Positions 4,890 to 48,493 of a stretch of DNA of 64,000 bases are shown here, in pieces. The stretch covers positions 1 through 64,000 of the forward strand of contig NIVC01001769.1 of assembly GCA_002269645.1 (NCBI GenBank), read 5' to 3'. The translations under genes and the position numbers were made by a program. Under the pieces are notes generated by a model. It worked only from the letters and a program-made list of their open reading frames with translations, searched no databases and was not told where the DNA came from. The stretch comes from Macrostomum lignano. Its lineage: Eukaryota. How positions within the stretch are numbered: the stretch's first letter is position 1; every line of letters begins with the position of its first letter.

Positions 4890-4890
4890 A

Positions 4891-12881: not shown

Positions 12882-13293
12882 AAAATAAAAAACTGTTCAA
12901 TATTAACTCCCTATAGTGTCATGAAAATTTTCCATTATTCATACCATGCCCATGGACTGCTCGTATTAGGGCATCATCAAACTATTAACAGATAAGCTGA
13001 GGACATGCTGTAAGATTTTGTCTAGCTGAAAGAAATTAAAAAAACATGCCAAAACGACATCACTGATGACATTGCAGGTAAAGTGCAGCCGGATTAGGTA
13101 TATTTTGCTTTGCTTTGGAGTATTAAATAAATTGTAGTAGGAGCGTCCGTGATACGTTATATCACATCAATATAGGTTCGGTTCTTTCAGTGTTGTTACT
13201 TTTCAGAGCAATGCATCCACTTTCGTCAAACTATTATTTAGTTATACAATACTGAATTGTAAGCTGTAGCATGCGTAGTTTGACATCTGTCGA

Positions 13294-15354
13294 TTAGTTG
13301 TTAGCAGCTGGCGTAGTTGCGACCACTGGTGCTGAGATGTTGGTATTAGCAGAGGTAGTTGGTGCTGGTGGTGGAGGTGCTGAATTGTCTGTATCAGCAG
13401 AGGTAGTTTGTGCTGGTGGTGGAGGTGCTGAGTTGTTGGTGTCAGCAGATGTAGTTGGTGCTGGTGGTGGAGGTGCTGAGTTGTTGGTGTCAGCAGAGGT
13501 AGTTTGAGCTGGTGGTGCTGGTGCTGAGTTGTTGGTATCAGCAGAGGTAGTTTGTGCTGGTGGTGCTGGTGCTGAGTTGTTGGTATCAGCAGAGGTAGTT
13601 TGTGCTGGTGGTGCTGGTGCTGAGTTGTTGGTATCAGCAGAGGTAGTTTGTGCTGGTGGTGCTGGTGCTGAGTTGTTGGTATCAGCAGAGGTAGTTTGTG
13701 CTGGTGGTGCTGGTGCTGAGTTGTTGGTATCAGCAGAGGTAGTTGATGCTGATGGTGCTGGTGCTGAGTTGTTCGAATTACAAGACCAGAGGCTTTTCCA
13801 ACATTGGCGCATGTCAGAACTGACATCGGGCCTGTCGTTGACACATAGCGGGATTAAACGGCAGCTAATGCAGAGAATCGGCAAAAGTAAAATCGACATC
13901 AGTATGGCAAAACAACACGAGCCGAATTGGATGCGTGCTTTGTCAATATACTTCTCCTCCGCATAAGGATAAATACAGCGGATACAAAGGTATCCGAATC
14001 CCTGGATTAAGATAAAAATAATTAGCAGGTAAACTGCTTTCGTTAAGTGGCATTACATTATCTAAACTTAAGCTACAAATATTGCATAAAAATGTGTCTA
14101 AAAAACCGATTTACTAAAATGTATGCCATTCTATCTATCATATTCTATGTCTAGCTTGATTCAAATATAAATAAACATGATTTGAACTCACTTACACAAA
14201 TGTAGTAAATAGAAAATAGAAGTAGTACAAAGTTTGGTAACCACCAAAAAAGGCCAATTAGTAGTATGTCTCTCTTAAGGCAGTAGGACATATATTCCTT
14301 AAATTCGCTACTGTTGCAGCACGCGCCGTGCACGTAACGGGAACTGCAACAGAACGATTTCGTGCTGTTTCTGAAGTTTACATCGGTGAAAGAAACGTTG
14401 GCCAAATAATCAATTTTATCTGGGCAGACGTGCAGAAAACGAGGGCATTTCGCACAGTGTGACTTCTTCATATTTGAAATTTGCTCCATCTCTGCTCATA
14501 TACCGCCAGAGATTCTTTGGGACTTGTGTTAATTTAGGTCTCTTTACCAGCGTTGCGGAACCTCTTTTGGATCTTGAATAAAGCAAGGGTGGTGATGCAT
14601 TGTTAAATGCAGTATTCGCCTATTTAAGAGCAAGAAAGGTATAAGTAGCTACTAAAGCCTCTGTCTGATCTTACCCTTTATAATCACGCGACTCGGCGCC
14701 TAAAATGCATGAGAAGTTTAATTTAGCAGTAGTTGCTTTGAAAAACCTCAAGTTCTGATCAAAATATCAGGTAAAGTGGCTCGTTTAGCATCAACATCAA
14801 CATCACTTAATTTAGTGAATGTTGATCATAAATAGCTCGTACTTGAAAACAAAGTATTGAGATGCGGACATTGTAAAAGGAAGCGTTTTATGGTACAGAT
14901 AGGTTGGATAAATCTGTCAAAAGTTCTATTTAAAGTCCATTTTTCTTAACAGTGTGCTTATAGTTGTGCTTGCTACTCAGCTCTCCATGACCAATAAAGT
15001 AATTCACATTAGGAGTTTCCTCAAGCTTAAAAGTCCTATTCCTTTGCTCCGTTTGAAGCTATGCAGAGATTTTGGTTTGAACAAAATAAAATTGCAATAA
15101 ATCTTCCGTTCTTCACCTTAAAAGCACAACGCCTTAAAGACCTTAATTAAAAAATCAGGAATGATAGGTTGAGTCAAAAAGATTGTGATCTGATCGGCTT
15201 TGTGCTTGAACGACAGTAGCTGATATATTCTGTGTGAACAACTACAGTTTGCATTTAAAATGTGTTTAAATATGGTGAAAAACTCACCCGTCAAAAGTCC
15301 GACAATGAGCAGTGTGATAACTGCCAGTAAATGCGTAATTTGCCAATTCTTCAT
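13294..15354 (-). pseudogene. S1: Shisa-like 2-TM gene copy with an 11-bp frameshift; exons 15354-15288, 14699-14675, 14572-14196, 14001-13294
   Basis: All introns are GT-AG. Exon 3 is 377 nt versus 388 nt in S5 (TCTTCATATAA missing near 14438), which shifts the frame inside the Cys domain. Confidence 0.8.
13342..13773 (-). repeat. 48-bp coding VNTR, 9 units (NNSAPAPPAQTTSADT)
   Basis: Counted from ORF 13294-13899 (42 + 9x16 + 15 = 201 aa). Confidence 0.95.
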
Positions 15355-20525: not shown

Positions 20526-20885
20526 AGGGGGAATGATTCTGAGTAGCACGTAGCTACTAGACTAAAAAACATTCCATCTCGAAAATGTACAATCTTTTGA
20601 GTGCAGTGTTTTTATGACTGTAGTCGTGAATATTTCTTATTTAATTTTTGTCGAGACATTTTATCGAGTAAAAGAGCAGTTTTTCAGTATTTAAAATTCG
20701 AATTTCAATATTTTTGAAAAAATAATTATCAATAAGACTAAATATTTCGAAGCATTCTTTGATATTTGAACTTAAATTTCTCAACATAAATGCTCAGCTT
20801 TACTTTGGGGCATAATAATGAAAATTCAGAATTTTATAGTTTGTCGGTACAGATGTTGCTCATTGATTTAGTTTTTGGCATCTCA

Positions 20886-21155
20886 TTATTGCTTTTGTGG
20901 CGCTTGCTGGATCGAGTCATTGCTTCCAGAATACTTGTATGGAGGAGGCGGCGGTGGCGGAGGGTATTGCTCTGGCCACTGCTGGTGCATCGGGGGGTAT
21001 TCTGGGCGAATCTGCGGCTGTGTGAAGCCTCCATATGGATGTGCCTGCTGGTGCGACAGGGAGTCCTGCTGCAGCTGCAACCCTTGATAACTCTGCTGCT
21101 GCTGCTGCTGCTGCTGCAGGCTTCCATGTTGCTGTTGTTCCTGCTTTTGAAAACC
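20886..21155 (-). pseudogene. S2: orphan last exon (Gln/Pro-rich PPxY tail), duplicate of S6 exon 4
   Basis: Intact acceptor TGTACTCAG|GGT and 90 codons ending ...YPPPPPPPPYKY...QKQ*. The upstream exons were not duplicated, because the block ends in (TAAC)n. Confidence 0.8.
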
Positions 21156-21239
21156 CTGAGTACAGGGGATGCAATCATTGAAATTTATTGCTAGCAGCAA
21201 TAAATACAGTCCTATGAAATTTATAATTTAATAACTACC

Positions 21240-21883
<644 letters not shown>

Positions 21884-26432: not shown

Positions 26433-27642
26433 ACTGAATGCCTCGACTAATTTTTAATGGACCGGTTTGTGCGGTGCAGTTCCGAGATTGAGTCCATCGC
26501 GTCCTGCTTCCGAAGTTCCCCGCCTGCCCCGCGCTCTGACCGGTAGTGGCGATTCGCCGACTTCTGTGGGTCAACAAGCTGGCAATAGCCGAGGCGCCAC
26601 TCTGGTCCTTCATCGATCGCAATGGACAGCGGCGCCATCTACCCCCTAGGGACCTGGACCGGTTTCTTGACTCTAAGCTGCAGAGGGCTGGGTGTGGCGG
26701 CAAGCTCTACTCGACTCACAGCCTGCGCCCAGGTGGGGCCATCTGGGCAGCTCACATGGGCCTGCCGGTGGCGGAGAACCATCGGATCGGCGACTGGAAG
26801 AGTTCGGCGGTGGAGCGCTACTTGCCCAACTCGGGTGTTGCTGCGGCCTCTCTGCGTTTTTTCTTCCGCCCTTAGTGCTCATTTTTGACGGTGCTCTTCC
26901 CGCTGATTTGTTTTTTGCTTAATGCCTAGCTGCTGCTCTTATCCCCCGTTGTGTTTGGCTTTGGAGGCCCGCTTCGTTTCTGTGCCAAGTTCGTGTTTTA
27001 ATGCCTTTGTTGCTGGAAGCACTAATGGACTGGTTTGTGCGGCGCCCAGTGGTCTTTTGGTCTTCATACACCAGCGGCCCAGGCTCGATTCCACGTGCAG
27101 TCAAGTTAATTTGGTGCTAAATTGGAATCTCGGCTTAGCTCCGCTCGTATGCAACTAACTCAATTGAGAGCCAACCACCAAGGCACAGTGAAGTCAGTGA
27201 AGTGTACATGCCAAAACGGTACGAGTACGAAAAGTTAGGATTGGCTGAACACTCCTGTGTTGAATGTTTGCCAACGCGTATGACTGCGTACGAATCCGCG
27301 TGCAATTGTGTGCCTGCGCAGGTGAGTCAGCAAAATGGGCAGCAATTCCTCTCGCTGGCTGTGTGTGACAACGTTGTTTAAAGTGCGTTAGGGTGCGCTG
27401 TGCCCGCCAGTTTCGTCTATGGTTAATGCTTAGTCGCGTCGTCGAAACGATGAGACAACGCAGCCCTGCCTATGGATTCTCGGCATTACAGTAGTCATTC
27501 ATGATGATCAAGATGAAACAAAACAAATTTCAACCAAATACACAAACTGGGCATTTTGATTCTGATAAGTCAATTGTATAGAAAGATTGCCATAGACTGA
27601 GTTCAATGAGAAAAAAAGCTAAAACAAAAAAATCTCACTAGG
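26430..27642 (+). repeat. 1.2 kb segment, inverted twin of 11669-12881
   Basis: Manual alignment shows only scattered substitutions. Confidence 0.93.
26546..26875 (+). pseudogene. Tyrosine recombinase C-terminal remnant (second copy)
   Basis: Translation is identical to 12436-12765. Confidence 0.75.
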
Positions 27643-27713
27643 TAATGTTAGTCAGCTTAAGTTGAACAGCTGCTGTAGCCCAACAACCGTTGCAAAGCAC
27701 ACCCAAAAGTCTC

Positions 27714-29532
27714 ATGATGAGTTGGCGGATCAACTGTTTACCTGCAGCTGTCGTACTACTCATAGGCGGATGTTTAATGGGTAAGTTTTCCGCAACATAA
27801 TTTAAATTTATCTTGTATTACATGCTCTGCTCTTTATTAATTAGTATGTTTCCTGAGTTATAAAATACTTCAGATTCTGTTTTATGAATTTTTCATAATC
27901 CAGAGATTTAAGACCCCCGAAAACCCCCCTATTATAGCGACGAAATTATAATCCTATATTAGTATTAAATACGCAGATATTACTTATTTGTCTATTTCAT
28001 AAACCTACACTACGAGTAAAACAAGTCTTCAGCAGTTGTCCTGTCCACCCTTCCGGCTGCATCTCTTGTCCTGGACAGGGACTTCAGCTAGCTCTGGGTT
28101 CAGATTAGAAAGCCCTGGCCCGAGGGCCTTGGGGCCCACAGCCTCAGCATTTATTGGCCTGAACTTCAATAGATTGCTCAGACTTTCATTAAAGATTAGG
28201 TCAGTAAGTTCATCCAGTGTTTTTTTAAAAATCCTCTCAGCACTAAACTCCCGCCATTCCTTTTCTTCTGGTGCAACGAAAACCAAGGATTTTAGATGCT
28301 GACCAAATCTTCAAGTAGGCCTTGTCGCCAATTCATGCTATTGCGATTCTGCTGCATTGAAATTCTCAGCTAAATTTTACGTAGAACTATGTAGAATTAC
28401 CAGCAGTGCAATATTACACGCTAAGAAATTCTTCAAAAAGTATTTTCCTATGCTTTTACGTGAAACTTCTGATCAATTTTAGGCTGCGTCTGTTCGAAAG
28501 ATTATAAAGGGTAAGACTTGCAGTGTCTTTATTAGCCACTACCTTTTTATTTTTAAATTAGGCATTACTGTATTATTTAACTATCATTATCTCGTTTCAC
28601 TTTAGAGGCAAAAGAGGTTCAGCAGAGCTGCTTAAAGCCAAAGGTGACAAAGTAAAGGTGTCCGAAAGTCTCAGGCAGTATATGGACAGAGACGGAACCG
28701 ATTTTAAATATGACGAAGTCACAGTGTGCGAACTAAAGAATTCAGAGCTACAGGCCTGCCCTGATAAGGTTGACTATTTGGTCAACGTTCCCTTCTCTGA
28801 AGTGAGCTCTAAAGCCAGCACGAGATCCCACTGCTGCGAGTCTTCGTGCTGCACTGCTGATGTCCAATTTGCGTTGAAATTAATGAGTGACGATAGTCGG
28901 TCACGCTACACATTACTTGTTGTGTCAGTAGTTTTACCCTTTGCCATTTTGATGCTCACCGTTTTATGCCGACTGTGTGGTGTAAGTCAACGCGAATCTC
29001 ATGTTTGGGTTTGAATTCTCGTAGGGGTAGAGGCATTTAGATTTCAGACCGAATATTTATATAATGGCAAGAATTCTAGATCCTTAACTTGCGTCCTGAG
29101 ATCGGGGCAATAGCTTTCAGATTGTCGACTATTCTGGGTTATATATGGCATCACTAGTGCCATATACCTGTAGCTACTGTGCTTATCTGGTGTAAATACT
29201 TAACAAAGTGAATATAAATCAACTAATTGCCTTTCTTTATGCAGCTACTTATATACTGCTGTAGCGATCCGGATGCGAAAAATGAACGTATTGCCGATTG
29301 TTATGGGAATACTTCTAAATTTTGGAAAGATTCATTAACATTTATCCTAATGCATCGGGAAAATCTGTTTTGGAAGACAAAGGAATCTGTTTTGCTGGCC
29401 CAGACAGAGGAGCCGTGGCGAGAGATAAGGAGGCTCAAGGCAGCCAGGAGGAGAAGGAAAACAAGAGCCAGACGCCTAGAAGTGAGGAGAGAACGTGAAA
29501 AACCCCCCAGGCCGCCGCCAGGCGGGGGTTAA
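27714..29532 (+). CDS. S4: Shisa-like type I membrane protein (~252 aa); exons 27714-27780, 28483-28510, 28606-28981, putative 29245-29532
   Basis: Signal peptide MMSWRINCLPAAVVLLIGGCLM, microexon GCVCSKDYKG, 6-Cys domain, TM LLVVSVVLPFAILMLTVL, then CRLCG|GTAAGT. Exon 4 is less certain and runs into LTR-derived sequence. Confidence 0.75.
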
Positions 29533-29807
29533 TAAAGGAGCGCAGAAGGGTTAACATAATGTATGCGGAGAGTTTCCATTGGCTGGCGAGATAAAAACAA
29601 GAAACTGAAATTATTGATCGCGCGAGATCCTACAGGCGTACGCAAAGATTACAAAGTACGCAGTGATTTAGCAATTAATACAAATTCGTTGCGCGCTACT
29701 ACAAGTAAACGTGAGAATACGAGATTGGAAAATTTAAATGAGAAATTGTAGGGAAATTGTAGTCCAACGGCCCTTTTGTGGGACCACTTAAAACTGACAA
29801 CATCACA
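29394..29807. mobile_element. Partial copy (right-hand ~410 bp) of the 23650-24408 LTR-like element
   Basis: Aligns to 24015-24408 and ends at the same ...ACTGACAAxxTCACA terminus. Confidence 0.7.
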
Positions 29808-29989
29808 CTATTCAATATTAACTCTTAATACACCTTTCACGTTCAACTTTGAACAAAGTCCAGCTCTGAAAAAAACTAGCAGAAATTCAATTCAGACAAT
29901 TCTTTTTGATCCAGCGTGCAAGAATGCTTTGGAAGTCGCCAAATGCGTGCCGAAATGCAAGTGTCTATGGTAATAGACAATGGTAATAG

Positions 29990-30710
29990 TGTCTATGTCT
30001 ATGGTGCGGCAGTTGGTGACGCGGCGGCGCTCACGAAAGCGCACAAGCACGTGGTCGAGCTGTGCCAGCCTCCGCGTAGCGTTCCGGCCGCGCGCGTTCC
30101 GCCGCCTCCGCTTGCAGCCCACGAAGGTCGCGAGCCTGCCCGGTGACTTGCGGAATCTGGTGTTGGCCGACACCATGTCCTGTCTCTCCAGGAAGTCCTC
30201 TAGCGCTCCGGTGTTGCCGTTCTCGCGCGCTGTCACGAACAGCGATCGCTCGGACCTACGCAGAACTGCGTTCAGGTCTCCGAGAATGACCACTGTGTCA
30301 CATTGCGCCATCTCCTCCACCCGCATCGAGAGTTGCTCGAAGAAGGCCTGAGCCTCATCGGAGCGGGTAGCAGGCGGCGCGTACGCGCAGAACAGGCGGG
30401 CGTTCCGGCCGTTAAGCCGGACGTCGACCCGAAGCAGCCGAGAAGACAGGGAGACGCAGCGACAGCTCTGCTGCAGCCTCGGTCCGATCAGCGCTCCAAC
30501 TCCTCCACGGCCTCGCTCATCCGCTGAGGTGTACCAGAGTGTCCAACCGGCGCCTAGGTCCTCACAGTGAAGTCCGGGGTCGGCTCTGATAGACACCTCC
30601 TGTAGTGCGATGACATCACAGCTGAGGTCGAGCGCTAGCCTCGCCAGCAGCCCTCTCCGCCATGTGGCCTTGAGAGTGCGGCAGTTCAGCGTCCCGATTA
30701 TGTTAAGCAT
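29990..30710 (-). mobile_element. Non-LTR retrotransposon APE endonuclease domain (5' part, 3' truncated)
   Basis: IGTLNCRTL, DVIALQEV, CAYAP, VILGDLNA and LDHVLV motifs. Confidence 0.9.
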
Positions 30711-31278
30711 GCAAATTAAGAGCCAGACTGGCGCTTTGGTGCGGTCACAGGCAGTTAAGCGGCTAAAGTAAGTTAAATATTAGTCTAAAGATCTCCGAAA
30801 GTGACAATGCATCTACATCATCGCTATCCGTCGACGTGTTAACACATTTAGTGCCAAAAGCGTGCAGTTACGTGTACTTTTACATGTACTTCTGGGAATT
30901 TGGTGATGAAATAGTACATTTAGTAGTGTATAAAGGCTCGCCAGCGCAAGAACCCCCTGCAAAAGTCCTCTCTGTCCCTGCATGGCCAATGCGATATTAG
31001 TCCCAGCAGCGTCCCTTCTATTCGGCTATGACTTCGGAATTTAGACAGCTAAAAGACACTAGATGGCAGGTAACTGCAGTGCCCATCTAGTCGGAAGTCC
31101 GATTTCGATAGCTCCGGTTTGGTGAGCCGGGGCGCACGGACTGGTGGTAGCGGGTTAGTTAATCTGCGGATTAGCTAATCTCTACCTTTCAAATTCTCCC
31201 TGCTTGTCTCTCGCTGTCTTCTCCTAGCTATAGGACCTTGCTGCTCGCCCACAATCTTTCCCGTGTGCCACAATCTTT

Positions 31279-33056
31279 GGTGTCCCAAAAGTTCCCGGAA
31301 TGTCTAACGTAACTCTTCAACAGAGCCATGAAATTTCACGCCCATGGTGTCAAATGAAAGGAAATTTTGTCACAAAGAATACAAAGTTAAAATCATGTTG
31401 ATATCTTTTTTTATTCAAGAGCTACAGCAAGAAACTTGCGCAAAGGTCAGGGGTAGTGTTACACAACCTCAACAATCTATGGCAATAATTTTTTCATCTC
31501 CATTTTTGGAGTTTTTCATTTTGAATTCGTGCTACTGACGTGTTAGAAAGACGTGGTAGTGTCTATGGAAAAAAGCAGAAATGCTCATAAAGCTAATCTG
31601 AGCTTTTGCGCGAGTGCAGATAATTCGTACCAAGCGCTTGCTTTCAACTTGAAATTTCTTTGCGAAAATGAGTTCTCTTCAGAGCCTTGAAAGTCAGCGA
31701 AGTCAAGTTTTTGCCCTTTGGTCAGTAGGATGGAGTGGAGCCAAGATTTCTGACCACTTATTCTCCATCCACGGTGAGAACAGCCTGAAAAAAACTGCAA
31801 TTTACGGATGGATCGAACGCTTTAAAGATGGCCAGTCTGCTGTGAATAATCAGCCACGCTCTGGCCGTCCTTGCACGTCGGGTGGAGAGACATCCCATCA
31901 ACGGATCGAGGCCCTCCTGGACTCGGATGCCCGCTTGACTATTCGAGAGATCTCTGATCAATTGGATATTGCCAAGTCGACTGTCCATCGAATAATCGTC
32001 AACGATCTGGGTCTCTCAAAGATCTCAGCCCGCTGGGTTCCCCGTCTCCTCACACCGGAGCTCAGGGCACAACGACTGAGCGTCGCCAAGTCCAACATTG
32101 AGCTCATTCAGAGGCAAGGTGGCTGGAGCGACTTCGGTAAGCTGATCATTTCTGGTGACGAGACCTGGATTCCGTTTTTTGATCCTGAGACAAAAGAAGA
32201 AAGCCGGGTTTGGACAAAGAAAGGGTCCCCTGCCCCTGTGAGGGCTCGGCGAGACCAGCATTCGAAAAAAGTCATGCTGACTCTCTTCTTTGACCACTGT
32301 GGTCCACTGACCATTGATTTTCTAGAGGAAGGGACCACCATCAATGCTGATCACTACGTTGCTAGCCTGGCCAGACTAAAAGATGATGTGAGAAACAAGC
32401 GGCGTCATTCTGGTGAGAAGCCCTGCTTTTTGCACCATGACAATGCTCGGCCACACACCGCTAGAAAGACGATGGCGCAGATCAACCAGCTAAATTTTGA
32501 GTTGGTGCCTCACCCGCCCTACTCGCCAGACTTGGCCCCTGCCGATTTTGCCATCTTTCCACAAATTAAAAAACTTATTCGTGGCCGGGTGTTCCAGAAC
32601 CGCAGTGAACTTGAAGACTTCACTCGTCGCGTCATCCTGCATGAAATGCCTCGAACTGTTTTTGCCCAGGCCATCGACGGCATGCTTTCAAGGTGGCAGA
32701 GGTGTGTCCAGCTGAATGGGGACTACGTGGAGAAGCCGCAGGTTGAACTTGACGATTCGCTTTGAATTTTGAATTGGTTCATGCCCATCATCGGCACCCA
32801 TTTCATCAACGGTATGAACTGTTCTGTGTTTTATTGTTTAAAATCATTGTCATAGATTGTTGAGGTTGTGTAACACTACCCCTGACCTTTGCGCAAGTTT
32901 ATTGCTGTAGCTCTTGAATAAAAAAAGATATCAACATGATTTTAACTTTGTATTCTTTGTGACAAAATTTCCTTTCATTTGACACCATGGGCGTGAAATT
33001 TCATGGCTCTGTTGAAGAGTTACGTTAGACATTCCGGGAACTTTTGGGACACCTCG
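31279..33056 (+). mobile_element. Tc1/mariner (DD34D) transposon with ~215-bp TIRs
   Basis: Inverted repeats 31279-~31491 and ~32841-33056. The right end is ...GGGACACCTCG|TA. The left end lacks the terminal CGA and the TA. Confidence 0.95.
31668..32765 (+). CDS. Mariner transposase, intact 365-aa ORF
   Basis: WVPRLL, GDETW, HDNARPH-x-YSPDLAPAD. 34 residues counted between the second and third catalytic Asp. Confidence 0.96.
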   Translation: MSSLQSLESQRSQVFALWSVGWSGAKISDHLFSIHGENSLKKTAIYGWIERFKDGQSAVNNQPRSGRPCTSGGETSHQRIEALLDSDARLTIREISDQLDIAKSTVHRIIVNDLGLSKISARWVPRLLTPELRAQRLSVAKSNIELIQRQGGWSDFGKLIISGDETWIPFFDPETKEESRVWTKKGSPAPVRARRDQHSKKVMLTLFFDHCGPLTIDFLEEGTTINADHYVASLARLKDDVRNKRRHSGEKPCFLHHDNARPHTARKTMAQINQLNFELVPHPPYSPDLAPADFAIFPQIKKLIRGRVFQNRSELEDFTRRVILHEMPRTVFAQAIDGMLSRWQRCVQLNGDYVEKPQVELDDSL

Positions 33057-33372
33057 TAGCTACCATGGCGCTGACCATCTGACAGGAGTGAGAGGCCAGA
33101 GCTCTTAGTGATTCATTTCAGAGTTCTTAGGCCCGAAGCTACAGGCTTAAAAAGGCCGAACCCATCAATTTAGCATAACAGCCATAGACTACAACCATAA
33201 ACAGAAATCTCTTCTCTCCATCGTGCAAGAATGTTCAGACCATGGATGAAGGAAATACACTGGATTGCTCATCTGAAATAGTCTATGGTCGAGTTCTTTC
33301 CTCCAAACTTGGAATTTACCCCCTAGGAATCTATTGGCTGATGAAAGTTAAAAATAATTACCCGTAGTATAA

Positions 33373-36189
<2,817 letters not shown>

Positions 36190-36455
36190 TAATATAATAA
36201 AACAAACCAAAAATGACTTCAATAATGACATTTTCAGGTAAAGTGCAGCAGGATTAGGTATATTTTGCTTTGCTTTGGAGCATTAAATAAATTGTAGTAG
36301 GAGCTTTCGTGATACGCTATAACACATCAATATAGGTTCGGTGTTTTTGATGTTGTTGCTTTTTCAGAGCAATGCATCCACTTTCTTCAAATGATTATTC
36401 AGTTATACAATACTGAATTGTAGGCTGTAACATGCGTAGTTTGATCATCTATCGA

Positions 36456-38334
36456 TTATTTGTTAGTAGCTGGTGTAGTTGCCACCACAGTTGCTAAGTT
36501 GTTGGTATCAGCAGAGGTAGTTGATGCTGGTGGTGCTGGTGCTGAGTTGTTGGTATCAGCAGAGGTAGTTTGTGCTGATGGTGCTGGTGCTGAGTTGTTG
36601 GTATCAGCAGAGGTAGTTTGTGCTGGTGGTGCTGGTGCTGAGTTGTTGGTATCAGCAGAGGTAGTTTGTGCTGGTGGTGCTGGTGCTGAGTTGTTGGTAT
36701 CAGCAGAGGTAGTTGATGCTGATGGTGCTGGTGCTGAGTTGTTCGAATTACAAGACCAGAGGCTTTTCCAACATTGGCGCATGTCAGAACTGACATCGGG
36801 CCTGTCGTTGACACATAGCGGGATTAAACGGCAGCTAATGCAGAGAATCGGCAAAAGTAAAATCGACATCAGTATGGCAAAACAACACGAGCCGAATTGG
36901 ATGCGTGCTTTGTCAATATACTTCTCCTCCGCATAAGGATAAATACAGCGGATACAAAGGTATCCGAATCCCTGGATTAAGATAAAAATAATTAGCAGGT
37001 AAACTGCTTTCGTTAAGTGGCATTACATTATCTAAACTTAAGCTATAAATATTGCATAAAAATGTGTCTAAAAAACCGATTTACTAAAATGTATGCCATT
37101 CTATCTATCATATTCTATGTCTAGCTTGATCCAAATATAAATAAACATGATTTGAACTCACTTACACAAATGTAGTAAATAGAAAATAGAAGTAGTACAA
37201 AGTTTGGTAACCACCAAAAAAGGCCAATTAGTAGTATGTCTCTCTTAAGGCAGTAGGACATATATTCCTTAAATTCGCTACTGTTGCAGCACGCGCCGTG
37301 CACGTAACGGGAACTGCAACAGAACGATTTCGTGCTGTTTCTAAAGTTTACATCGGTGAAAGAAACGTTGGCCAAATAATCAATTTTATCTGGGCAGACG
37401 TGCAGAAAATCTTCATATAACGAGGGCATTTCGCACAGTGTGACTTCTTCATATTTGAAATTTGCTCCATCTCTGCTCATATACCGCCAGAGATTCTTTG
37501 GGACTTGTGTTAATTTAGGTCTCTTTACCAGCGTTGCGGAACCTCTTTTGGATCTTGAATAAAGCAAGGGTGGTGATGCATTGTTAAATGCAGTATTCGC
37601 TTATTTAAGAGCAAGAAAGGTATAAGTAGCTACTAAAGCCTCTGTCTGATCTTACCCTTTATAATCACGCGACTCGGCGCCTAAAATGCATGAGAAGTTG
37701 AATTTAGCAGTAGTTGCTTTGAAAAACCTCAAGTTCTGATCAAAATATCAGGTAAAGTGGCTCGTTTAGCATCAACATCAACATCACTTAATTTAGTGAA
37801 TGTTGATCATAAATAGCTCGTACTTGAAAACAAAGTATTGAGATGCGGACATTGTAAAAGGAAGCGTTTTATGGTACAGATAGGTTGGATAAATCTGTCA
37901 AAAGTTCTATTTAAAGTCCATTTTTCTTAACAGTGTGCTTATAGTTGTGCTTGCTACTCAGCTCTCCATGACCAATAAAGTAATTCACATTAGGAGTTTC
38001 CTCAAGCTTAAAAGTCCTATTCCTTTGCTCCGTTTGAAGCTATGCAGAGATTTTGGTTTGAACAAAATAAAATTGCAATAAATCTTCCGTTCTTCACCTT
38101 AAAAGCACAACGCCTTAAGACCTTAATTAAAAAATCAGGAATGATAGGTTGAGTCAAAAAGATTGTGATCTGATCGGCTTTGTGCTTGAACGACAGTAGC
38201 TGATATATTCTGTGTGAACAACTACAGTTTGCATTTAAAATGTGTTTAAATATGGTGAAAAACTCACCCGTCAAAAGTCCGACAATGAGCAGTGTGATAA
38301 CTGCCAGTAAATGCGTAATTTGCCGATTCTTCAT
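36456..38334 (-). CDS. S5: Shisa-like protein with two hydrophobic segments and a Ser/Thr/Pro/Ala repeat tail (331 aa); exons 38334-38268, 37680-37656, 37553-37166, 36971-36456
   Basis: Signal peptide MKNRQITHLLAVITLLIVGLLT, microexon GAESRDYKG and C-x12-C-x24-CC-x8-CC. Exon lengths 67+25+388+516 = 996 nt, in frame, all GT-AG. Confidence 0.85.
36504..36743 (-). repeat. 48-bp coding VNTR, 5 units
   Basis: ORF 36456-36869 = 42 + 5x16 + 15 aa. Confidence 0.95.
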
Positions 38335-39174
38335 ACTCGTAAAAGTTTTGCTTGCTGTTGTGTACCTGCGATCTTGTTGCTTGGATCTTTTTAGTCCGAA
38401 TGAAGAACGGCTGAGTTACGCTTAGAAATTGGGAATTCAAGGCTGATTAGAAGTCAAAAATTTCAACAGGACAACTTTTACCATAGAAAACAGATTTGCA
38501 AGCGAAAGCCCAGCGGGAGTTCTGCTTTTCGACTAAAAATTTGTATAACACAAGCCCTAAGCTATTCGCTTTCGTTAGTTTACCTTTTTCAAGCTTACTC
38601 TTCTCACGAATTTCCACTGCTATGCTGCTTTGCATATAAGCGTCAGGTTAATTGGTACCTTACCATTTTTCGTAATATAACCTAAATTCGATGGCAAAAT
38701 TCAGTAAAAATTTACTCATCGTAAATAACAATGATGTTTTCTAGCGAGGAACGCCGACGGGTACCTTAGATAGATTAGTTGAAGAGAAAGGTGCACGAAT
38801 CCTTATGTAAATATGGAACCAAGGACTACGAAGGATACCGGACGGGAAACTACGTTTTTTGCCAAATTTTAGGCGGCAGCTTTTTGAATAATAATTTACG
38901 GAGACAGCTAGGGATTTGCTGTTACAGCACAAAAGCTATTAACGCTTTTTCATAGGTGACAAATCCTATATTCATCTTTTGATAGTTTTTGTCTTTCTTT
39001 TACCTCTATTGATATTCATAGAGCTTTTCGTTAGCAAAGAAGAATTTTCAACTGTTATAAATCTATAAAACTATAAATCTTATGTACATTGCTTTGAATT
39101 CGTTAGTAAAAGTAACGGAAATGTTGAAAATTATATCAGGGCTTAAAATCATCAAATAGCTGACCAAGTCAGTT

Positions 39175-40415
39175 AAACAGCTGATCAATTGAGCCAAACA
39201 CAGCTGATCAATTAAGCCAAACACAGCTGATCAATTAAGCCAAACACGGCTGATCGATTGAGCCAAACACAGCTGATCAATTAAGCCAAACACAGCTGAT
39301 CGATTGAGCCAAACACAGCTGATCAATTAAGCCAAACACAGCTGATCAATTAAGCCAAACACAGCTGATCAATTGAGCCAAACACAGCTGATCAATTGAG
39401 CCAAACACAGCTGATCAATTGAGCCAAACACAGGTGATCAATTGAGCCAAACACAGCTGATCAATTAAGCCAAACACAGGTGATCAATTGAGACAAACAC
39501 AGCTGATCAATTGAGCCAAACACAGCTGATCAATTAAGCCAAACACAGCTGATCAATTGAGCCAAACACAGCTGATCAATTAAGCCAAACACAGCTGATC
39601 AATTGAGCCAAACACAGCTGATCAATTGAGCCAAACACAGCTGATCAATTAAGCCAAACACAGGTGATCAATTGAGACAAACACAGCTGATCAATTGAGC
39701 CAAACACAGGTGATCAATTGAGCCAAACACAGCTGATCAATTGAGCCAAACACAGCTGATCAATTAAGCCAAACACAGCTGATCAATTGAGCCAAACACA
39801 GCTGATCAATTGAGCCAAACACAGCTGATCAATTGAGCCAAACACAGCTGATCAATTAAGCCAAACACAGCTGATCAATTGAGCCAAACACAGCTTATCA
39901 ATTGAGCCAAACACAGCTGATCAATTAAGCCAAACACAGGTGATCAATTGAGACAAACACGGCTGATCAATTGAGCCAAACACAGGTTATCAATTGAGCC
40001 AAACACAGGTTATCAATTGAGCCAAACACAGCTGATCAATTAAGCCAAACACAGCTGATCAATTGAGCCAAACACAGCTGATCAATTGAGCCAAACACAG
40101 CTGATCAATTGAGCCAAACACAGCTGATCAATTGAGCCAAACACAGCTGATCAATTGAGCCAAACACAGCTGATCAATTGAGCCAAACACAGCTGATCAA
40201 TTGAGCCAAACACAGCTGATCAATTAAGCCAAACACAGCTGATCAATTGAGCCAAACACAGCTGATCAATTGAGCCAAACACAGCTGATCAATTGAGAAA
40301 AAAACACAGCTGATCAATTGAGCCAAACACAGCTGATCAATTAAGCCAAACACAGCTGATCAATTGAGCCAAACACAGCTGATCAATTGAGCCAAACACA
40401 GCTGATCAATTGAGC
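39175..40415. repeat. 23-bp tandem array (copy 2, about 3 units longer), followed by the SINE body to ~40610
   Basis: Directly visible. The offset between the duplicated blocks rises by ~70 bp across the array. Confidence 0.97.
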
Positions 40416-40914
40416 CAACTTAACTCTGCTTTGCTTCAATTCATCCAGCTGTAAAATGGGTGCCAGCATTAGCTGGGATAATTGAGGGTGTGTAGCGACC
40501 CCCCCCCCCAGTCCTTGGACTGAACAGCCGATCGCAGCCTTCAGATGCGCCGCGCAATAGCTGCGGCTGAGCTGTCGGTTGCAAATTTTCCTATTAGGGC
40601 AGTTGTAATCAATTTTTTTATCGTTACCTGCGTTCCTTTTTGGCTCTCTCGCGTGGCGCGTGTACATTTTACATGTATAAAATCAAACTTCTGCTCTATC
40701 AAATTACCAGAGTGGCTTGGGATTCAGGCTAGGAGAACCAGCCATGGTTCGAGTAAAAAATTCATGAAACAATTCATCCTAGAAGTTGGTTCCTCCACTT
40801 TCCTAGTACCTACGCTGCTGTAACTACTGAATTATTTTGCATCAAAATATGATTTTGAGCCAGAATTGTACAAACAATACGATATGAGCTAAGGTAAGAA
40901 GGGAATGATGCTGA

Positions 40915-42516
40915 GTGGGAATAATGCTAAATGGGGAATGATGCTAAAGGGGGAATGACGCTAAAGGGGGAATGATGCTAAAATGGGGAATGATGCTAAA
41001 GGGTGAATGATGCTAAAGGGGGAATGATGCTAAAAGGGGGAATGATGCTAAAGGGGGAATGATGCTAAAAGGGGGAATGATGCTAAATGGGGAATGATGC
41101 TAAAAGGGGGAATGATGCCAAAGGGGAAATCATGCTAAAGGGGGAATGATGCTAAAGGGGGAACGATGCTAAAAGGGGGAATGATGCTAAAAGGGGGAAT
41201 GACGCTAAAGGGGGAATGATGCTAAAGGGGGAATGATGCTAAAAGGGGGAATGATGCTAAATGGGGAATGATGCTAAATGGGGGAATGATGCTAAAAGGG
41301 GAATGATGCTAAAAGGGGGAATGATGCTAAAAGGGGGAATGATGCTAAAGGGGGAATGAGGCTAAAAGGGGGAACGATGCTAAAGGGGGAATGATGCTAA
41401 AAGGGGGAATGATGCCAAAGGGGAAATCATGCTAAAGGGGGAATGATGCTAAAGGGGGAATGATGCTAAAGGGGGAATGATGCTAAAGGGGGAATGATGC
41501 TAAAAGGGGGAATGATGCTAAAGGGGGAATGATGCTAAAGGGGGAATGATGCTAAAAGGGAGAATGATGCTAGATGGGGAATGATGCTAAATGGGGGAAT
41601 GATGCTAAAAGGGGAATGATGCTAAAAGGGGGAATGATGCTAAAAGGGGGAATGATGCTAAAGGGGGAATGAGGCTAAAAGGGGGAACGATGCTAAAGGG
41701 GGAATGATGCTAAAAGGGGGAATGATGCTAAAGGGGGAATGATGCTAAATCGGGAATGATGCTAAAAGGGGGAATGATGCTAAAAGGGGGAATGATGCTA
41801 AAGGGGGAATGATGCTAAAGGGGGAATGATGCTAAAAGGGGGAATGATGCTAGATGGGGAATGATGCTAAATGGGGGAATGATGCTAAAAGGGGAATGAT
41901 GCTAAAAGGGGGAATAATGCTAAATGGGGAATGATGCTAAAAGGGAGAATGATGCTAAATATGGAATGATGCTAAAAGGGGGAATGATGCTAAATGGGGA
42001 ATGATGCTAAAAGGGGGAATGATGCTAAATCGGGAATGATGCTAAAAAGGGGAATGATGCTAAAAGGGGGAATGATGCTAAATGGGGAATGATGCTAAAT
42101 GGGGGAATGATGCTAAAAGGGGAATGATGCTAAAGGGGGAATGATGCTAAAAGGGGGAATGATGCTAAATGGGGAATGATGCTAAAAAAGGGGGAATGAT
42201 GCTAAATGGGGAATGATGCTAAAAGGTGAAATCATGCTAAATGGGGAATGATGCTAAAAGGGGAATGATGCTAAAAGGGGAAGTCATGCTAAATGGGGAA
42301 TGATGCTAAAAGGGGAATGATGCTAAAAGGGGAATGATGCTAAAAGGGGAATGATGCTAAAGGGGGAATGATGCTAAAAGGGGTAATGATGCTAAAGGGG
42401 GAATGATGCTAAAAGGGGGAGTAATGCTAAAGGGGGAATGATGCTAAAAGGGGAAATCATGCTAAAGGGGGAATGATGCTAAAAGGGGGAATGATGCTAA
42501 AAGGGGGAATGATGCC
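40915..42516. repeat. G-rich 16-17 bp satellite (copy 2)
   Basis: Directly visible. Confidence 0.98.
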
Positions 42517-43550
42517 TGTTGTGGGTTGATGGCTTTGCCATAGACATTTTTGTTACGCGACTGCGTTGATGAATTGAACCATGCTATTGAGTTATGAAAT
42601 AAACAATAGACGCGTCAGAGGTCAGCAGACCGCTAGACTGACAATTGCTAAAGGCTAAAAGCCAAAAGCACAACAGTGGCGTCGCAAGCATAGGCTACGA
42701 AAATGCCTGGAAGTACGCCAGCATCGCCAACTAAAGGAGTTGGTAAAACGGTTTCGAGCGACAAAGCACCACCGCTTGCGATCTCGTCGAAATCAGTCCA
42801 AGCGACAAAGTCGGCAACAGCGACAGCGCAGAACCCAAGCGCACAAGTATCGAGAGGACAGCAAGTTGACATCGAAAAACTCGATGAAAGTTCGAACTTC
42901 CAGAGGTGGTTGGACCGATTCACACTGTGCAGCGAACTCAACGGCTGGCAGGACGACACGAAAAACAAGCTGCTGCTGATGAAGCTCAGCACCAAGCTGT
43001 ACGACGCATTGGCAGATCGAGCCGCTCCCAAGAAGCCGGGAGAAAAGAGCTTCGATGAACTGATCAAACTACTGGCCAGCATCCTGGAACCAAAGACGTT
43101 CGTTATGGCTGAGAGATTCAATTTCCAGCATATCACTCGCACGGCATCAATGAGCATTCGTGAGTATGCACAGCAACTCTGCATGCAGGCAGACAAGTGT
43201 CAGTTTGGCCTATCCAGAGATGAGAGACTGAGAGATCAGCTCGTATTCGGTTTGAATGACAAGGTGGCCATCAGCAAGTTATTGGAACAGGACTTCAGCA
43301 CTCTCACGTTTGAGACAGCTATCAACATCGCTGAAGCGCACCAGAACCTATCACAAACGCAAATACTAAAGGGTTGCACCAGTCAGCCGCAGTCTTCTGA
43401 AGTAATGAAAATTTCAGCATCGGTGGCCAGAGGCTCCCACTCTACAAGCCCAAGTGTGGCAGATGTGGCACAATGCATGGCTCCAATGGAGGGTGTCCTG
43501 CGAAAGGAAAAACGTGCAACAAATGTGGCATGCAAAACCACTTCGCAACA
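42517..43550 (+). mobile_element. Internally deleted Ty3/gypsy LTR-gag element (copy 2; 1-bp deletion frameshifts the Zn knuckles)
   Basis: Same LTR, PBS and TSD (ATGCC) as copy 1. AAGCCCAAG here versus AAGCCCCAAG in copy 1. Confidence 0.85.
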
Positions 43551-43933
43551 ATGCCAAAGGGGAAATCATGCTAAAGGGGAATGATTCTGAGTAGCACGTA
43601 GCTACTAGACTAAAAAACATTCCATCTCGAAAATGTACAATCTTTTGAGTGCAGTGTTTTTATGACTGTAGTCGTGAATATTTCTTATTTAATTTTTGTC
43701 GAGACATTTTATCGAGTAAAAGAGCAGTTTTTCAGTATTTAAAATTCGAATTTCAATATTTTTGAAAAAATAATTATCAATAAGACTAAATATTTCGAAG
43801 CATTCTTTGATATTTGAACTTAAATTTCTCAACATAAATGCTCAGCTTTACTTTGGGGCATAATAATGAAAATTCAGAAATTTATAGTTTGTCGGTACAG
43901 ATGTTGCTCATTGATTTAGTTTTTGGCATCTCA

Positions 43934-47157
<3,224 letters not shown>

Positions 47158-48493
47158 TCACGCTATGATCCAGTAGGCTTGCAGGCGATGAATGCTTCGG
47201 GTTGAACATTTGACCAGAAATGCCTAAATTGTCTGCGTGTCTTTAAATGCTTTGTTTTACTATTTTAACGATTATTTTTGTCCCTTAAAGGATAAATGCC
47301 ATGTCTATGGGCTTAGGGTCGCCAAAGCATGTCAGCATAAGCTTTGATTAAACAATATAGATTTCTGAGCCATGCTTCAAATAGGGAAGGGAAGAGAAAG
47401 CGGAAGCTGGATATTTGCCTCAGACAAGGAGTAGGTAATTAAAGCCGGAAAATTTTTGTATATTAATGTAGTGATCCGCTAGTTTGGTGTTAGGCATTGT
47501 ACTATTGTCAGCAGCTTCCCTCGCCCTCGCCCTCTCTCTGGGTTGCTGTCTGCCGCTGGGCAGCCTCCCTCCCTTTTGCTGCCTGTTCTCTGTCGCCCCC
47601 CTCTTCTCTGCGCTCTTTCTTGCAGCCACGAGCTTCTCCGCTGTGGCCTGCTCTGCGTTTAGTTCCTGTCCTGAGGTCACGCTGGTGGCCTGTTTCCCAT
47701 GTCATGTGAGCAAGTCACCTGCCAAGTCTTGTTTTCTCGAAGTCCTAAAGTGCAGTAAAGTGTTTACTGCACTCTTTGGCCCGTGTTTACGAGAAGAATC
47801 ACGTGTTTCGGGGCCCTTGCCTTCTGTAAGGTAATAGGTGACTCATGTTTCTAAAAATAGATACTGAGTCATGCGGCTCTGTGCACTTTACCCGCAAATC
47901 CTGCCTTCCCTAAGGCGGAGGGTGACGTCAGTTCTAAAAATTGAACAGAGTCACGAGGTCCGGCGCACACTGGTGCAGCGGGGATTTCCTGCCTTAAAAT
48001 ATTTGCCCCTCACCCTTGGTTCAGTCAAGGATTCTTCTTCTTGTTGTTGTTCTTCTTTAGTCTAGTTTTCCATACTTCATTCAGTTGCCAATTAAAGCTA
48101 TCTGTAATTTGCCTGATTAAACTTAGAAGCCCAAGCCTAAGGGAGGCTAACACTGCCTTCCCAGCCACCCCTTGAGCCCGGTGGGATCTGCTGACCAGGA
48201 CGCCTTGTTCATTAATCTGCAAATCTTCACGCTGTGCTGAAATCGTTGACTTGTTTATTTCGCTCCGACGGGAAGCTCACCTCACCGAACGCCGAGACCT
48301 GAAGGAACTGGTGGCAGCACTACCTACGCTACTAAGAGCTAATCGAAGGCTTCCGGTTGAGAAGACGGAGAGCCCAAATCACTGTGCTAGACAGTAGGAG
48401 AAGCACAGGTACAACATTGGTGGCAGCGGTGGGATTCAAGGACCTACCAGACTACCTCGAGACAACCCCGAGACAAACCCTCAATACTTCACT

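What the first reader, a model, noticed from the sequence alone, without database searches (positions are those of the whole stretch)
36456..37553. S5: two-TM Shisa-like protein with a VNTR-encoded N-glycosylated mucin-like stalk
Seen: TM1 (ILLIGLFWWLPNFVLLLFSIYYIC) is followed by a short charged loop, a second hydrophobic run (CCFAILMSILLLPILCISC), a Cys/Trp segment and 16-aa repeats NNSAPAPPAQTTSADT. Each repeat carries an N-x-S sequon and Thr/Ser. There is no PY tail. Inference: TM2 returns the C-terminus outside the cell, which would make the sequons usable. This departs from the single-pass definition of the family. Repeat number is 5 here and 9 in S1, so stalk length may be tunable.
Basis: partly seen in the sequence, partly recalled or inferred. 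Interest (0 to 1): 0.72.

Follow-up and report, generated by a model that had tools for sequence, protein, structure and literature searches.

The report
Flatworm Shisa-like protein, two membrane spans
This is a real, already-annotated gene of the flatworm Macrostomum lignano for a Shisa-like membrane protein whose usual proline-rich tail is replaced by a second membrane helix and a minisatellite-encoded Ser/Thr/Pro repeat tail; it is an unusual lineage-specific variant, but its topology and glycosylation are still only predicted.

Summary
The window is the first 64 kb of M. lignano contig NIVC01001769.1. On the minus strand a four-exon gene (38334..36456, all GT-AG) encodes 331 aa. In order it has a signal peptide, a C..CP..CC..CC Cys-rich domain, TM1, a 16-aa charged loop, a second and even more hydrophobic segment, a CWKSLWSC segment, and 5 x 16-aa NNSAPAPPAQTTSADT repeats from a 48-bp minisatellite.

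The exon 3 to exon 4 junction (YYIC|GFGY) matches GenBank protein PAA64264.1, which is RNA-based. That entry shows only 3 repeats.

The Shisa-like assignment is supported only transitively. S5 has no Pfam hit, but hhalign links it at 95.6% to neighbouring paralogs that reach Shisa_N and carry PPxY tails. S5 has no PY motif.

Hydropathy and an AlphaFold helical hairpin (pLDDT 84-93) favour an N-out/C-out two-pass topology. This is not proven.

Two caveats apply. The repeat tail is a free C-terminal end, not a stalk. The longer arrays sit in broken copies: S1 (9 repeats) has an 11-bp frameshift, and the copy on another contig is split by an LTR retrotransposon. No orthologs were found outside M. 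lignano.

Verdict: new variant of a known kind, modest interest.

The parts
38268..38334 (-). Exon 1: ATG and signal peptide MKNRQITHLLAVITLLIVGLLT(G), followed by donor gtgagt
   Evidence: identical to the N-terminus of PAA64264.1
37656..37680 (-). Exon 2 (25 nt): (G)AESRDYK(G), acceptor ttttag, donor gtaaga
   Evidence: Read and matched to P0001. The script located the identical S1 copy at 14675-14699.
37166..37553 (-). Exon 3: linker, Cys-rich Shisa-like ectodomain (C71, C84, C109-C110, C119-C120, C132; 37250-37435; three sequons NVS, NST, NSS) and the first 24 residues of TM1 (37166-37237)
   Evidence: only the annotated frame is open
36972..37165 (-). Intron 3 (194 nt), GTAAGT...CAG, phase 0
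   Evidence: the junction YYIC|GFGY is present in GenBank protein PAA64264.1
36942..36971 (-). Start of exon 4: last 10 residues of TM1 (GFGYLCIRCI)
   Evidence: AlphaFold2 models residues 135-170 as one helix
36894..36941 (-). Short charged loop YPYAEEKYIDKARIQF (residues 171-186), predicted cytosolic
   Evidence: 3 positive, 3 negative residues
36831..36887 (-). Core of the second hydrophobic segment, CCFAILMSILLLPILCISC (residues 189-207), predicted TM2
   Evidence: Most hydrophobic 19-mer in the protein; lies inside AlphaFold2 helix 176-216, pLDDT about 87-92
36750..36773 (-). Cys/Trp segment CWKSLWSC (residues 227-234)
36504..36743 (-). Five 48-bp units encoding NNSAPAP[PS]A[QS]TTSADT; each has one N-N-S sequon. 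The whole 95-aa tail (units 1-5 plus the degenerate sixth) is 35% Ser+Thr and 15% Pro.
   Evidence: TRF (36492-36743, 5.2 copies, 96%); unit table; composition
36456..36503 (-). Degenerate sixth unit NNLATVVATTPATNK plus TAA stop
13290..15354 (-). S1: near-identical paralog with 9.3 repeat units (13326-13773). An 11-bp deletion in exon 3 (between 14439 and 14440) shifts the frame after residue 75 and gives a stop at codon 83.
36191..44946 (.). Copy 2 of an approximately 8.8-kb direct segmental duplication. Copy 1 is 13034-21883. Identity is 98-99% upstream of the array and 89% downstream.

Best explanation
S5 is the one intact copy of a transcribed, lineage-specific Macrostomum lignano gene (GenBank PAA64264.1, BOX15_Mlig031209g1). 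It belongs to a local cluster of Shisa-like (STMC6-type) genes. It keeps the family's front half: a signal peptide, a six-Cys C..CP..CC..CC ectodomain and an aromatic-rich TM1. Its last exon differs from those of its neighbours, which encode a cytosolic proline-rich PPxY tail or a basic tail. The S5 last exon encodes a 16-residue loop, a second and very hydrophobic Cys-rich helix, a C-x6-C Cys/Trp segment, and a Ser/Thr/Pro/Ala-rich tandem repeat made by a 48-bp minisatellite. The most likely product is a two-pass hairpin protein with both ends outside the cell or in the lumen and almost nothing in the cytosol. Such a protein could not recruit WW-domain (NEDD4-type) ligases as canonical family members do. 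It would instead display a Cys-rich domain beside a free, probably glycosylated, mucin-like C-terminal tail. Shown here: gene structure, splice junction, repeats, absence of a PY motif, paralog relationships, and copy-number differences between copies. Inferred: membrane topology, glycosylation, and any function. Repeat number differs between genomic copies through ordinary minisatellite instability; nothing here shows that this variation is used.
For: The window is 100% identical to NIVC01001769.1 over 21.9 kb. The protein is 100% identical to PAA64264.1 over the non-repeat residues and has the same exon junctions. That annotation derives from RNA-seq and transcript mapping (PMC5730564). All splice sites are canonical, the CDS is 996 nt, and only the annotated frame is open. 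The paralog alignment has invariant C, CP, CC, CC and an exon-final C. Hhalign of S5/S3 against paralogs E/F/G gives 95.6%, E 1.2e-8. P0007, the UniRef relative of paralog F, scores 29.1 bits against Shisa_N, above the cut-off of 22. Paralogs E and G have PPPY and PPMY tails, whereas S5 has none. Segment 189-207 is the most hydrophobic 19-mer. AlphaFold2 gives a helix-turn-helix over 135-216 with pLDDT up to 93. The tail is 35% Ser+Thr and 15% Pro, with 5 sequons starting 24 residues or more after the hydrophobic core. Array sizes are 5.2, 9.3 and 6.1+5.3 units in three copies.
Against: No topology predictor or experiment was available, and the charge distribution around the helices is neutral. 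The AlphaFold2 run had no alignment and says nothing about the membrane. S5 matches no Pfam model, even at E<=10. No homolog of the TM2/tail exon exists in 5.8 billion clusters or 1.84 billion representatives, so conservation cannot be assessed. Two of the three genomic copies are disrupted. Substitutions between copies are too few to show purifying selection: 1-2 non-synonymous and 1 synonymous in exons, similar to the intron rate. Sequon conservation across units only reflects how recent the repeat is.
Confidence: 0.55

Rival explanations
1. The protein is single-pass. The second hydrophobic, Cys-rich run is a palmitoylated, membrane-associated or re-entrant juxtamembrane segment. The Ser/Thr/Pro repeat is then a disordered cytosolic tail, as in other Shisa-like proteins, and the sequons are never used.
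For: The family is defined as single-pass with a disordered cytosolic tail (PMC10531659 abstract; PMC11399591). There are 9 Cys between residues 160 and 213, consistent with palmitoylation. Paralog G also has a tandem-repeat-encoded tail, and it is proline-rich and presumably cytosolic. Flanking charges give no orientation signal.
Against: Segment 189-207 is more hydrophobic than TM1 and than the signal peptide, so it would be expected to integrate. AlphaFold2 models a tight hairpin with TM1. The tail has no PY or other recognisable cytosolic motif. Its composition is typical of an extracellular Pro/Thr/Ser domain.
Confidence: 0.2
2. This is a young, decaying or marginal gene. The last exon arose by capture of a minisatellite-bearing sequence in a rapidly rearranging, recently duplicated gene cluster. 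The transcript exists but the product has little or no selected function, and repeat-number differences are neutral slippage. This is compatible with either topology.
For: S1 is frameshifted. The second-contig copy has an LTR retrotransposon inside the array and a premature stop in the last unit. There are no orthologs or relatives of the tail exon anywhere. Exon and intron divergence are similar. The genome is highly redundant and repeat-rich (PMC5730564).
Against: S5 keeps an intact 331-codon frame with four canonical splice sites, and all six family cysteines. It passed an RNA-based annotation filter. The S104T change in the other copy keeps the sequon. Loss of redundant copies is expected in a neopolyploid and says little about the retained copy.
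Confidence: 0.22
3. The gene model is wrong: exon 4 is not part of this mRNA, and the repeat ORF is a by-product of a stop-free minisatellite.
For: In the in-frame test of the repeat part of exon 4, one plus-strand frame has no stop and two minus-strand frames have one each, the coding frame's being its own terminator. Longer ORFs run through the array on both strands. The GenBank protein disagrees with the genome by two repeat units.
Against: The 228-nt non-repeat part of exon 4 is open only in the frame set by a phase-0 GTAAGT/CAG junction. The independent RNA-based annotation uses the same junction and the same stop at 36456.
Confidence: 0.03

Closest known systems
Shisa / Shisa-like (STMC6) single-pass adaptors, including CYYR1, WBP1/VOPP1, TMEM92 and the CX family (Pei & Grishin 2012, cited from my own knowledge and via PMC5578492 and PMC11399591)
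   Same: It has a signal peptide and a small ectodomain with the C*C*CC*CC cysteine pattern directly abutting an aromatic- and Cys-rich TM helix. Homology to paralogs that reach Pfam Shisa_N is supported. UniRef names the protein 'CX domain-containing'.
   Different: It is predicted to have two membrane helices instead of one. It has no proline-rich cytosolic tail and no PPxY motif, so the WW-domain/NEDD4 adaptor mechanism shown for CYYR1 (PMC11399591) cannot apply. S5 itself is below detection for every Pfam model.
Neighbouring paralogs in the same window: E (47157-43934, minus), F (53519-53076, minus), G (55338-56829, plus), and S3 (about 28610-29531, plus)
   Same: They share the exon layout, with the Cys-rich domain and TM1 on one exon that ends at or just after a conserved Cys (S3 ends one Gly later). 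The cysteine skeleton is the same. Identity is 22-43%.
   Different: Their last exons encode Gln/Pro-rich tails with PPPY (E) or PPMY (G), or a basic tail (S3, inferred splice), with no second hydrophobic segment. S5 exon 4 shows no significant similarity to them.
Mucin-like Pro/Thr/Ser (PTS) tandem-repeat domains encoded by VNTR minisatellites, such as those of vertebrate mucins and mucin stalks of type I receptors (own knowledge)
   Same: The tandem 16-aa units are rich in Thr, Ser, Pro and Ala and are encoded by a 48-bp minisatellite whose copy number differs between genomic copies.
   Different: The region is very short (5 units, 80 aa). It lies after a second TM helix as a free C-terminal end rather than between the membrane and a globular domain. 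Glycosylation and variation between individuals are untested.
Two-pass N-out/C-out hairpin membrane proteins such as ninjurins (own knowledge; analogy of topology only)
   Same: The predicted arrangement is the same: both termini extracellular and a short cytosolic loop.
   Different: There is no sequence or fold relationship; the PDB sequence and fold searches found nothing.

Membership tests
Shisa-like / STMC6 superfamily | N-terminal signal peptide followed by an extracellular domain with six conserved cysteines in the pattern C*C*CC*CC | tested here: met
   C71, C84, C109-C110 and C119-C120, plus an extra C132. These columns are invariant across five window paralogs. An N-terminal hydrophobic leader is present.
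Shisa-like / STMC6 superfamily | Direct profile match to a curated family model (Pfam Shisa_N PF13908, CX, CYYR1) | tested here: not met
   hmmscan of S5, P0001 and the isolated ectodomain returned 0 families at E<=10. The UniRef name 'CX domain-containing protein' could not be reproduced with this Pfam copy.
Shisa-like / STMC6 superfamily | Homology to recognised members by profile-profile comparison | tested here: met
   Hhalign of S5+S3 against paralogs E/F/G gives probability 95.6%, E 1.2e-8 over 85 columns. P0007 (F-type, UniRef 'CYYR1') scores 29.1 bits against Shisa_N, cut-off 22; window paralogs E, F and G score 16.7-20.9 bits, below the cut-off.
Shisa-like / STMC6 superfamily | Single transmembrane helix | tested here: not met
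   By prediction only. There are two hydrophobic segments, 137-170 and 187-213, and the second is the more hydrophobic. AlphaFold2 models a helical hairpin. No experimental topology exists.
Shisa-like / STMC6 superfamily | Proline-rich cytosolic C-terminal region, usually with PY ([LP]PxY) motifs | tested here: not met
   There is no [LP]PxY motif in S5. Paralogs E (PPPY) and G (PPMY) have one.
Mucin-like PTS tandem-repeat domain | Tandem repeats rich in Pro, Thr and Ser | tested here: met
   Five 16-aa units; the tail is 20% Thr, 15% Ser, 15% Pro and 24% Ala.
Mucin-like PTS tandem-repeat domain | Extracellular or lumenal location with dense O- and/or N-glycosylation | not testable with these tools
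   This depends on the predicted topology. It needs tag accessibility and glycosidase shift assays.
VNTR (variable-number tandem repeat) coding polymorphism | Different unit numbers at homologous loci | tested here: met
   5.2 units (S5), 9.3 (S1), and 6.1+5.3 split by an insertion on NIVC01001132.1. The GenBank protein shows 3 units, which may reflect transcript collapse.
VNTR (variable-number tandem repeat) coding polymorphism | Variation among individuals or alleles of the intact, expressed gene | not testable with these tools
   Only one inbred-line assembly is available. The longer arrays are in disrupted copies.

The most novel reading that the evidence does not exclude
A member of the single-pass Shisa-like adaptor superfamily was converted, by replacement of its last exon, into a hairpin surface glycoprotein with both ends outside the cell. 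It would lack the cytosolic PY adaptor function and would display its Cys-rich receptor-binding domain next to a minisatellite-encoded mucin brush of variable length. This would be a decoy-like or purely extracellular mode of action not described for this family.
Probability: 0.3. Interest if true: 0.45.

Novelty: new variant of a known kind. Interest (0 to 1): 0.3.

Why it matters
Shisa-like and STMC6 proteins are understood as single-pass adaptors. Their ectodomain engages membrane receptors and their cytosolic PY tail recruits NEDD4-family ligases. A natural paralog that keeps the ectodomain but swaps the tail for a second span and an extracellular repeat would be a ready-made separation-of-function variant. 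It would also be a small example of how last-exon replacement and minisatellite expansion change membrane topology within a tandem gene cluster. The practical value is more modest. The deposited protein (PAA64264.1) is 32 residues shorter than the genome encodes. The second annotated copy (PAA71860.1) bridges a retrotransposon as if it were an intron. S1 is a pseudogene as assembled. Because the gene is restricted to M. lignano in all the databases searched, and two of three copies are broken, its biological importance may be small.

Tried and rejected
1. Pfam scans of S5, P0001 and the isolated ectodomain gave no family at E<=10.
2. The word-seeded search of 5.8 billion clusters found only the protein's own cluster. 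Exhaustive phmmer against 1.84 billion representatives found only M. lignano fragments of the S2/S3 paralog and one spurious repeat hit, P0006. A profile of five paralogs found only M. lignano proteins. Cross-species conservation of TM2 and the tail could therefore not be tested.
3. The PDB sequence search gave only a low-complexity match to Sec62 at E 0.0024. Foldseek against the PDB gave nothing below E of about 3.5, as expected for a model with mean pLDDT 56.6.
4. I tested whether S5 exon 4 is homologous to the putative tail exon of S3. BLASTP gave E 2.1. The best ungapped 54-nt diagonal was reached by 11 of 200 codon shuffles. This is not significant, so the origin of exon 4 remains unknown.
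5. dN/dS between the three copies has too few substitutions to be informative.
6. The positive-inside rule is uninformative, with 3 positive and 3 negative residues in each flank.
7. I searched papers for the locus tags Mlig031209 and Mlig009658 and found no paper. The Pei & Grishin 2012 paper was not held, so the family definition is taken from papers that cite it and from my own knowledge.
Full report
WHERE THE WINDOW COMES FROM
The non-repeat part of the predicted protein is 100% identical to GenBank PAA64264.1. That entry is BOX15_Mlig031209g1 of Macrostomum lignano, named 'CX domain-containing protein' in UniRef. The 21.9-kb locus fetched around that gene (NIVC01001769.1, positions 26456-48334) is 100% identical to window 48334..26456. 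The window is therefore the first 64 kb of that contig of the Mlig_3_7 assembly. It is free-living flatworm DNA, not prokaryotic or viral.

Yes. The gene is on the minus strand and has four exons: 38334..38268, 37680..37656, 37553..37166 and 36971..36456. All are flanked by canonical GT-AG sites. Together they give a 996-nt CDS of 331 codons plus the stop.

Exon 3 ends ...ILLIGLFWWLPNFVLLLFSIYYIC|gtaagt. Exon 4 begins cag|GFGYLCIRCIYPYAEEKYIDKARIQFGSCCFAILMSILLLPILCISCRLIPLCVNDRPDVSSDMRQCWKSLWSCNS. Five units of NNSAPAP[P/S]A[Q/S]TTSADT follow, then a degenerate sixth unit, NNLATVVATTPATNK*.

TRF reports the 48-bp array at 36492-36743 (5.2 copies, 96% match) and the S1 array at 13326-13773 (9.3 copies). 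In exon 3 and in the 228-nt non-repeat part of exon 4, only the annotated frame lacks stops. The repeat itself is nearly stop-free in several frames on both strands: one plus-strand frame has no stop and two minus-strand frames have one each.

That test is passed. The GenBank protein contains YYIC|GFGY, and that annotation was built from RNA-seq and mapped transcripts (StringTie, TACO and BLAT; PMC5730564).

AN ANNOTATION DISCREPANCY
PAA64264.1 spans exactly 38334..36456 but has 299 aa with 3 repeat units. The same contig encodes 5 units and 331 aa. The sense strand of units 1-5 has no GT dinucleotide, so a canonical intron of 96 nt cannot exist there. The gap is best explained by mapping a transcript with fewer units. 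That transcript was either collapsed in short-read assembly or came from a shorter allele. It is not good evidence for a VNTR.

THE GENOMIC CONTEXT
S5 and S1 lie in an approximately 8.8-kb direct segmental duplication, 13034-21883 and 36191-44946. Identity is 98-99% from the array upstream and falls to 89% downstream of it.

S1 differs by an 11-bp deletion in exon 3, corresponding to S5 positions 37420..37410. This shifts the frame after residue 75 and gives a stop at codon 83. As assembled, the 9-repeat copy cannot make the protein.

A third copy lies on a redundant contig, NIVC01001132.1 (locus L002). It has intact exons 1-3 and 6.1 units, then an insertion of about 4.3 kb, then 5.3 more units. 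The insertion encodes protease, reverse transcriptase, RNase H and integrase, so it is an LTR retrotransposon. The reading frame runs into the element and ends ...TTSADTNCHDLWGGAAW*. GenBank PAA71860.1 treats the element as an intron.

S5 is therefore the only intact copy of three. The assembly is known to be highly redundant, with 180 Mb in blocks of at least 95% identity because of the DV1 karyotype.

WHAT FAMILY IS IT?
The window holds a cluster of related genes:
- S1 (13.3-15.4 kb, minus strand)
- a truncated S2 (about 26.0-26.4 kb, plus)
- S3 (28.6-29.5 kb, plus)
- S5
- E (47157-43934, minus; annotated, 277 aa)
- F (53519-53076, minus)
- G (55338-56829, plus)

Their ectodomain-plus-TM exons align with invariant C, CP, CC, CC and an exon-final Cys. 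This is the C*C*CC*CC pattern that defines Shisa-like/STMC6 proteins (PMC5578492).

S5 itself hits no Pfam model, even at E<=10. The evidence for membership is transitive:
- Hhalign of S5+S3 against E/F/G gives 95.6% probability, E 1.2e-8.
- P0007, the F-type protein that UniRef calls CYYR1, scores 29.1 bits on Shisa_N, above the cut-off of 22.
- Window paralogs E, F and G score 16.7-20.9 bits, below the cut-off.

E ends in a Gln/Pro-rich exon with PPPY. G ends in a PPMP-repeat exon with PPMY. S5 has no [LP]PxY motif. S3, the closest paralog (39-45% identity in the ectodomain), appears to splice to a basic, non-hydrophobic tail. That splice is inferred.

No other sequence in the window resembles S5 exon 4. 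Neither the 5.8-billion-cluster database nor the 1.84-billion representative library contains a match. Its similarity to the S3 tail exon is not significant. 'Shisa-like' is therefore right at the superfamily level. The TM2-plus-repeat exon is an innovation of the S1/S5 lineage and its origin is unknown.

TOPOLOGY
A simple 19-residue scan shows three hydrophobic regions:
- the leader, residues 6-24;
- residues 137-170;
- residues 186-213, whose core 189-207 (CCFAILMSILLLPILCISC) is the most hydrophobic in the protein. Its Kyte-Doolittle mean is 2.65. Summing the Hessa biological scale, quoted from memory, gives about -2 kcal/mol.

AlphaFold2 was run without an alignment. It models helix 135-170, a turn at 171-175 and helix 176-216, with mean pLDDT of 84-93 for residues 141-200. 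The ectodomain and the repeats are below 50.

The leader and the three sequons and seven cysteines of the ectodomain place that domain in the lumen. TM1 must then act as a stop-transfer sequence. A strongly hydrophobic segment 16 residues later is expected to re-insert and carry the 118-residue C-terminal region outside. This is inference from established topogenesis rules, not a test. Flanking charges are balanced at 3+/3- everywhere and do not help.

I put the two-pass N-out/C-out reading at about 0.6. If it is right, the first repeat sequon lies at least 24 residues beyond the hydrophobic core, far enough for oligosaccharyltransferase (own knowledge). The composition of 35% Ser+Thr and 15% Pro suits O-glycosylation.

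First, the repeats are not a stalk. The Cys-rich domain is 4 residues from TM1, and the repeats form a free end after TM2. Second, a sequon in every unit is not independent evidence, because the units are near-identical copies.

'TUNABLE LENGTH'
Unit numbers do differ between copies: 5.2, 9.3 and 11.4 split by an insertion. But the longer arrays belong to copies that are broken as assembled. Variation between individuals is untested, and the 3-unit GenBank protein may be an artefact. All differences between S5 units are non-synonymous (P/S and Q/S). Substitutions between copies are too few to judge selection. Ordinary minisatellite slippage in redundant DNA explains what is seen.

MECHANISM, COMMITTED
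The product is most likely a small hairpin glycoprotein that presents a Shisa-type Cys-rich domain beside a short mucin-like C-terminal tail. Only about 16 residues would lie in the cytosol. Canonical relatives work through PPxY-WW contacts with NEDD4-family ligases, as shown for CYYR1 (PMC11399591). S5 cannot work that way. It could only act through its ectodomain, for example as a ligand or receptor binder or as a decoy. This last step is speculation.

The main rivals are as follows:
- A single-pass protein with a palmitoylated second segment and a cytosolic disordered tail (0.2).
- A young, decaying gene of little function (0.22). This is compatible with either topology.
- A wrong gene model (0.03).

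VERDICT
This is a new variant of a known kind: a Shisa-like ectodomain with a replaced tail exon. It sits in a gene that is already deposited as a hypothetical protein. Interest is modest (0.3), for three reasons. The decisive property, topology, is unproven. The gene is restricted to one species in every database searched. Two of its three copies are disrupted.

Noticed in passing
window 36456-38334 compared with GenBank PAA64264.1: The deposited protein (299 aa, 3 repeat units) is 32 residues shorter than the same contig encodes (331 aa, 5 units). No GT exists on the sense strand of the array, so the missing 96 nt cannot be a canonical intron. It is probably an artefact of mapping a collapsed or shorter transcript.
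   Followed up: yes
L002 (NIVC01001132.1) 11899-16200: An LTR retrotransposon of about 4.3 kb, with protease, RT, RNase H and integrase Pfam hits, is inserted inside the 48-bp coding array of the second-contig copy of the gene. GenBank PAA71860.1 bridges it as an intron. The last unit there also has TNN* in place of TNNL.
   Followed up: yes
window 14439/14440 (S1 exon 3): An 11-bp deletion relative to S5 (TTATATGAAGA) causes a frameshift and a stop at codon 83. S1 is a pseudogene unless this is an assembly error.
   Followed up: yes
window 43934-47157 (-), 53076-53519 (-), 55338-56829 (+), 25977-26432 (+), 28610-29531 (+): The window contains a cluster of at least five further Shisa-like/CYYR1-like genes. 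E and G have Gln/Pro-rich tails with PPPY and PPMY. The tail of G is itself encoded by a 12-bp tandem repeat (56650-56740, ATGCCGCCGCCG x 7.6). S2 looks truncated, losing its TM.
   Followed up: partly
window 4890-10650: A 5.7-kb array of a 15-bp unit (CCATCCAGTCAGCAA, about 350 copies, 80% match) shows strong negative GC skew. Some frames translate as [18 protein letters not shown]... It is unclear whether it is coding or a satellite.
   Followed up: no
window 16196-17368 / 39177-40418, 17850-19465 / 40901-42515, and 21286-21883 / 44284-45452: Large minisatellite arrays lie inside both copies of the segmental duplication: a 23-mer x about 51-54, a 17-mer x about 93, and CTAA/ACTA x 149-296. 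Copy numbers differ between the two copies.
   Followed up: no
window 11670-12884 and 26427-27641: A 1.2-kb inverted duplication at 99.4% identity. One ORF inside it (26546-26875) has motifs reminiscent of a tyrosine recombinase but no Pfam hit, so this may be a transposable element.
   Followed up: partly
window 29892-30710 (-): A 272-aa ORF matches Pfam Exo_endo_phos (E 2e-7), as in the endonuclease of a LINE-type retroelement. It lies just downstream of S3.
   Followed up: partly
window 31258-33056: A segment of about 1.8 kb is bounded by 214-bp inverted repeats (31279-31492 and 33053-32840, 98.6%). It is absent from the redundant contig L002, so it is probably a TIR-type or foldback element insertion polymorphism.
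   Followed up: no
window 34700-35900: A GA-rich low-complexity tract of about 1.2 kb lies just downstream of S5. It is absent from L002, together with the rest of 33374-36189.
   Followed up: no
S5 residues 31-45 and S3/P0003: A conserved dibasic-containing stretch (GSKRGSATLVKRPK in S5, GKRGSAELLKGDK in S3/P0003) lies between the signal peptide and the Cys-rich domain. It may be a propeptide or convertase site.
   Followed up: no
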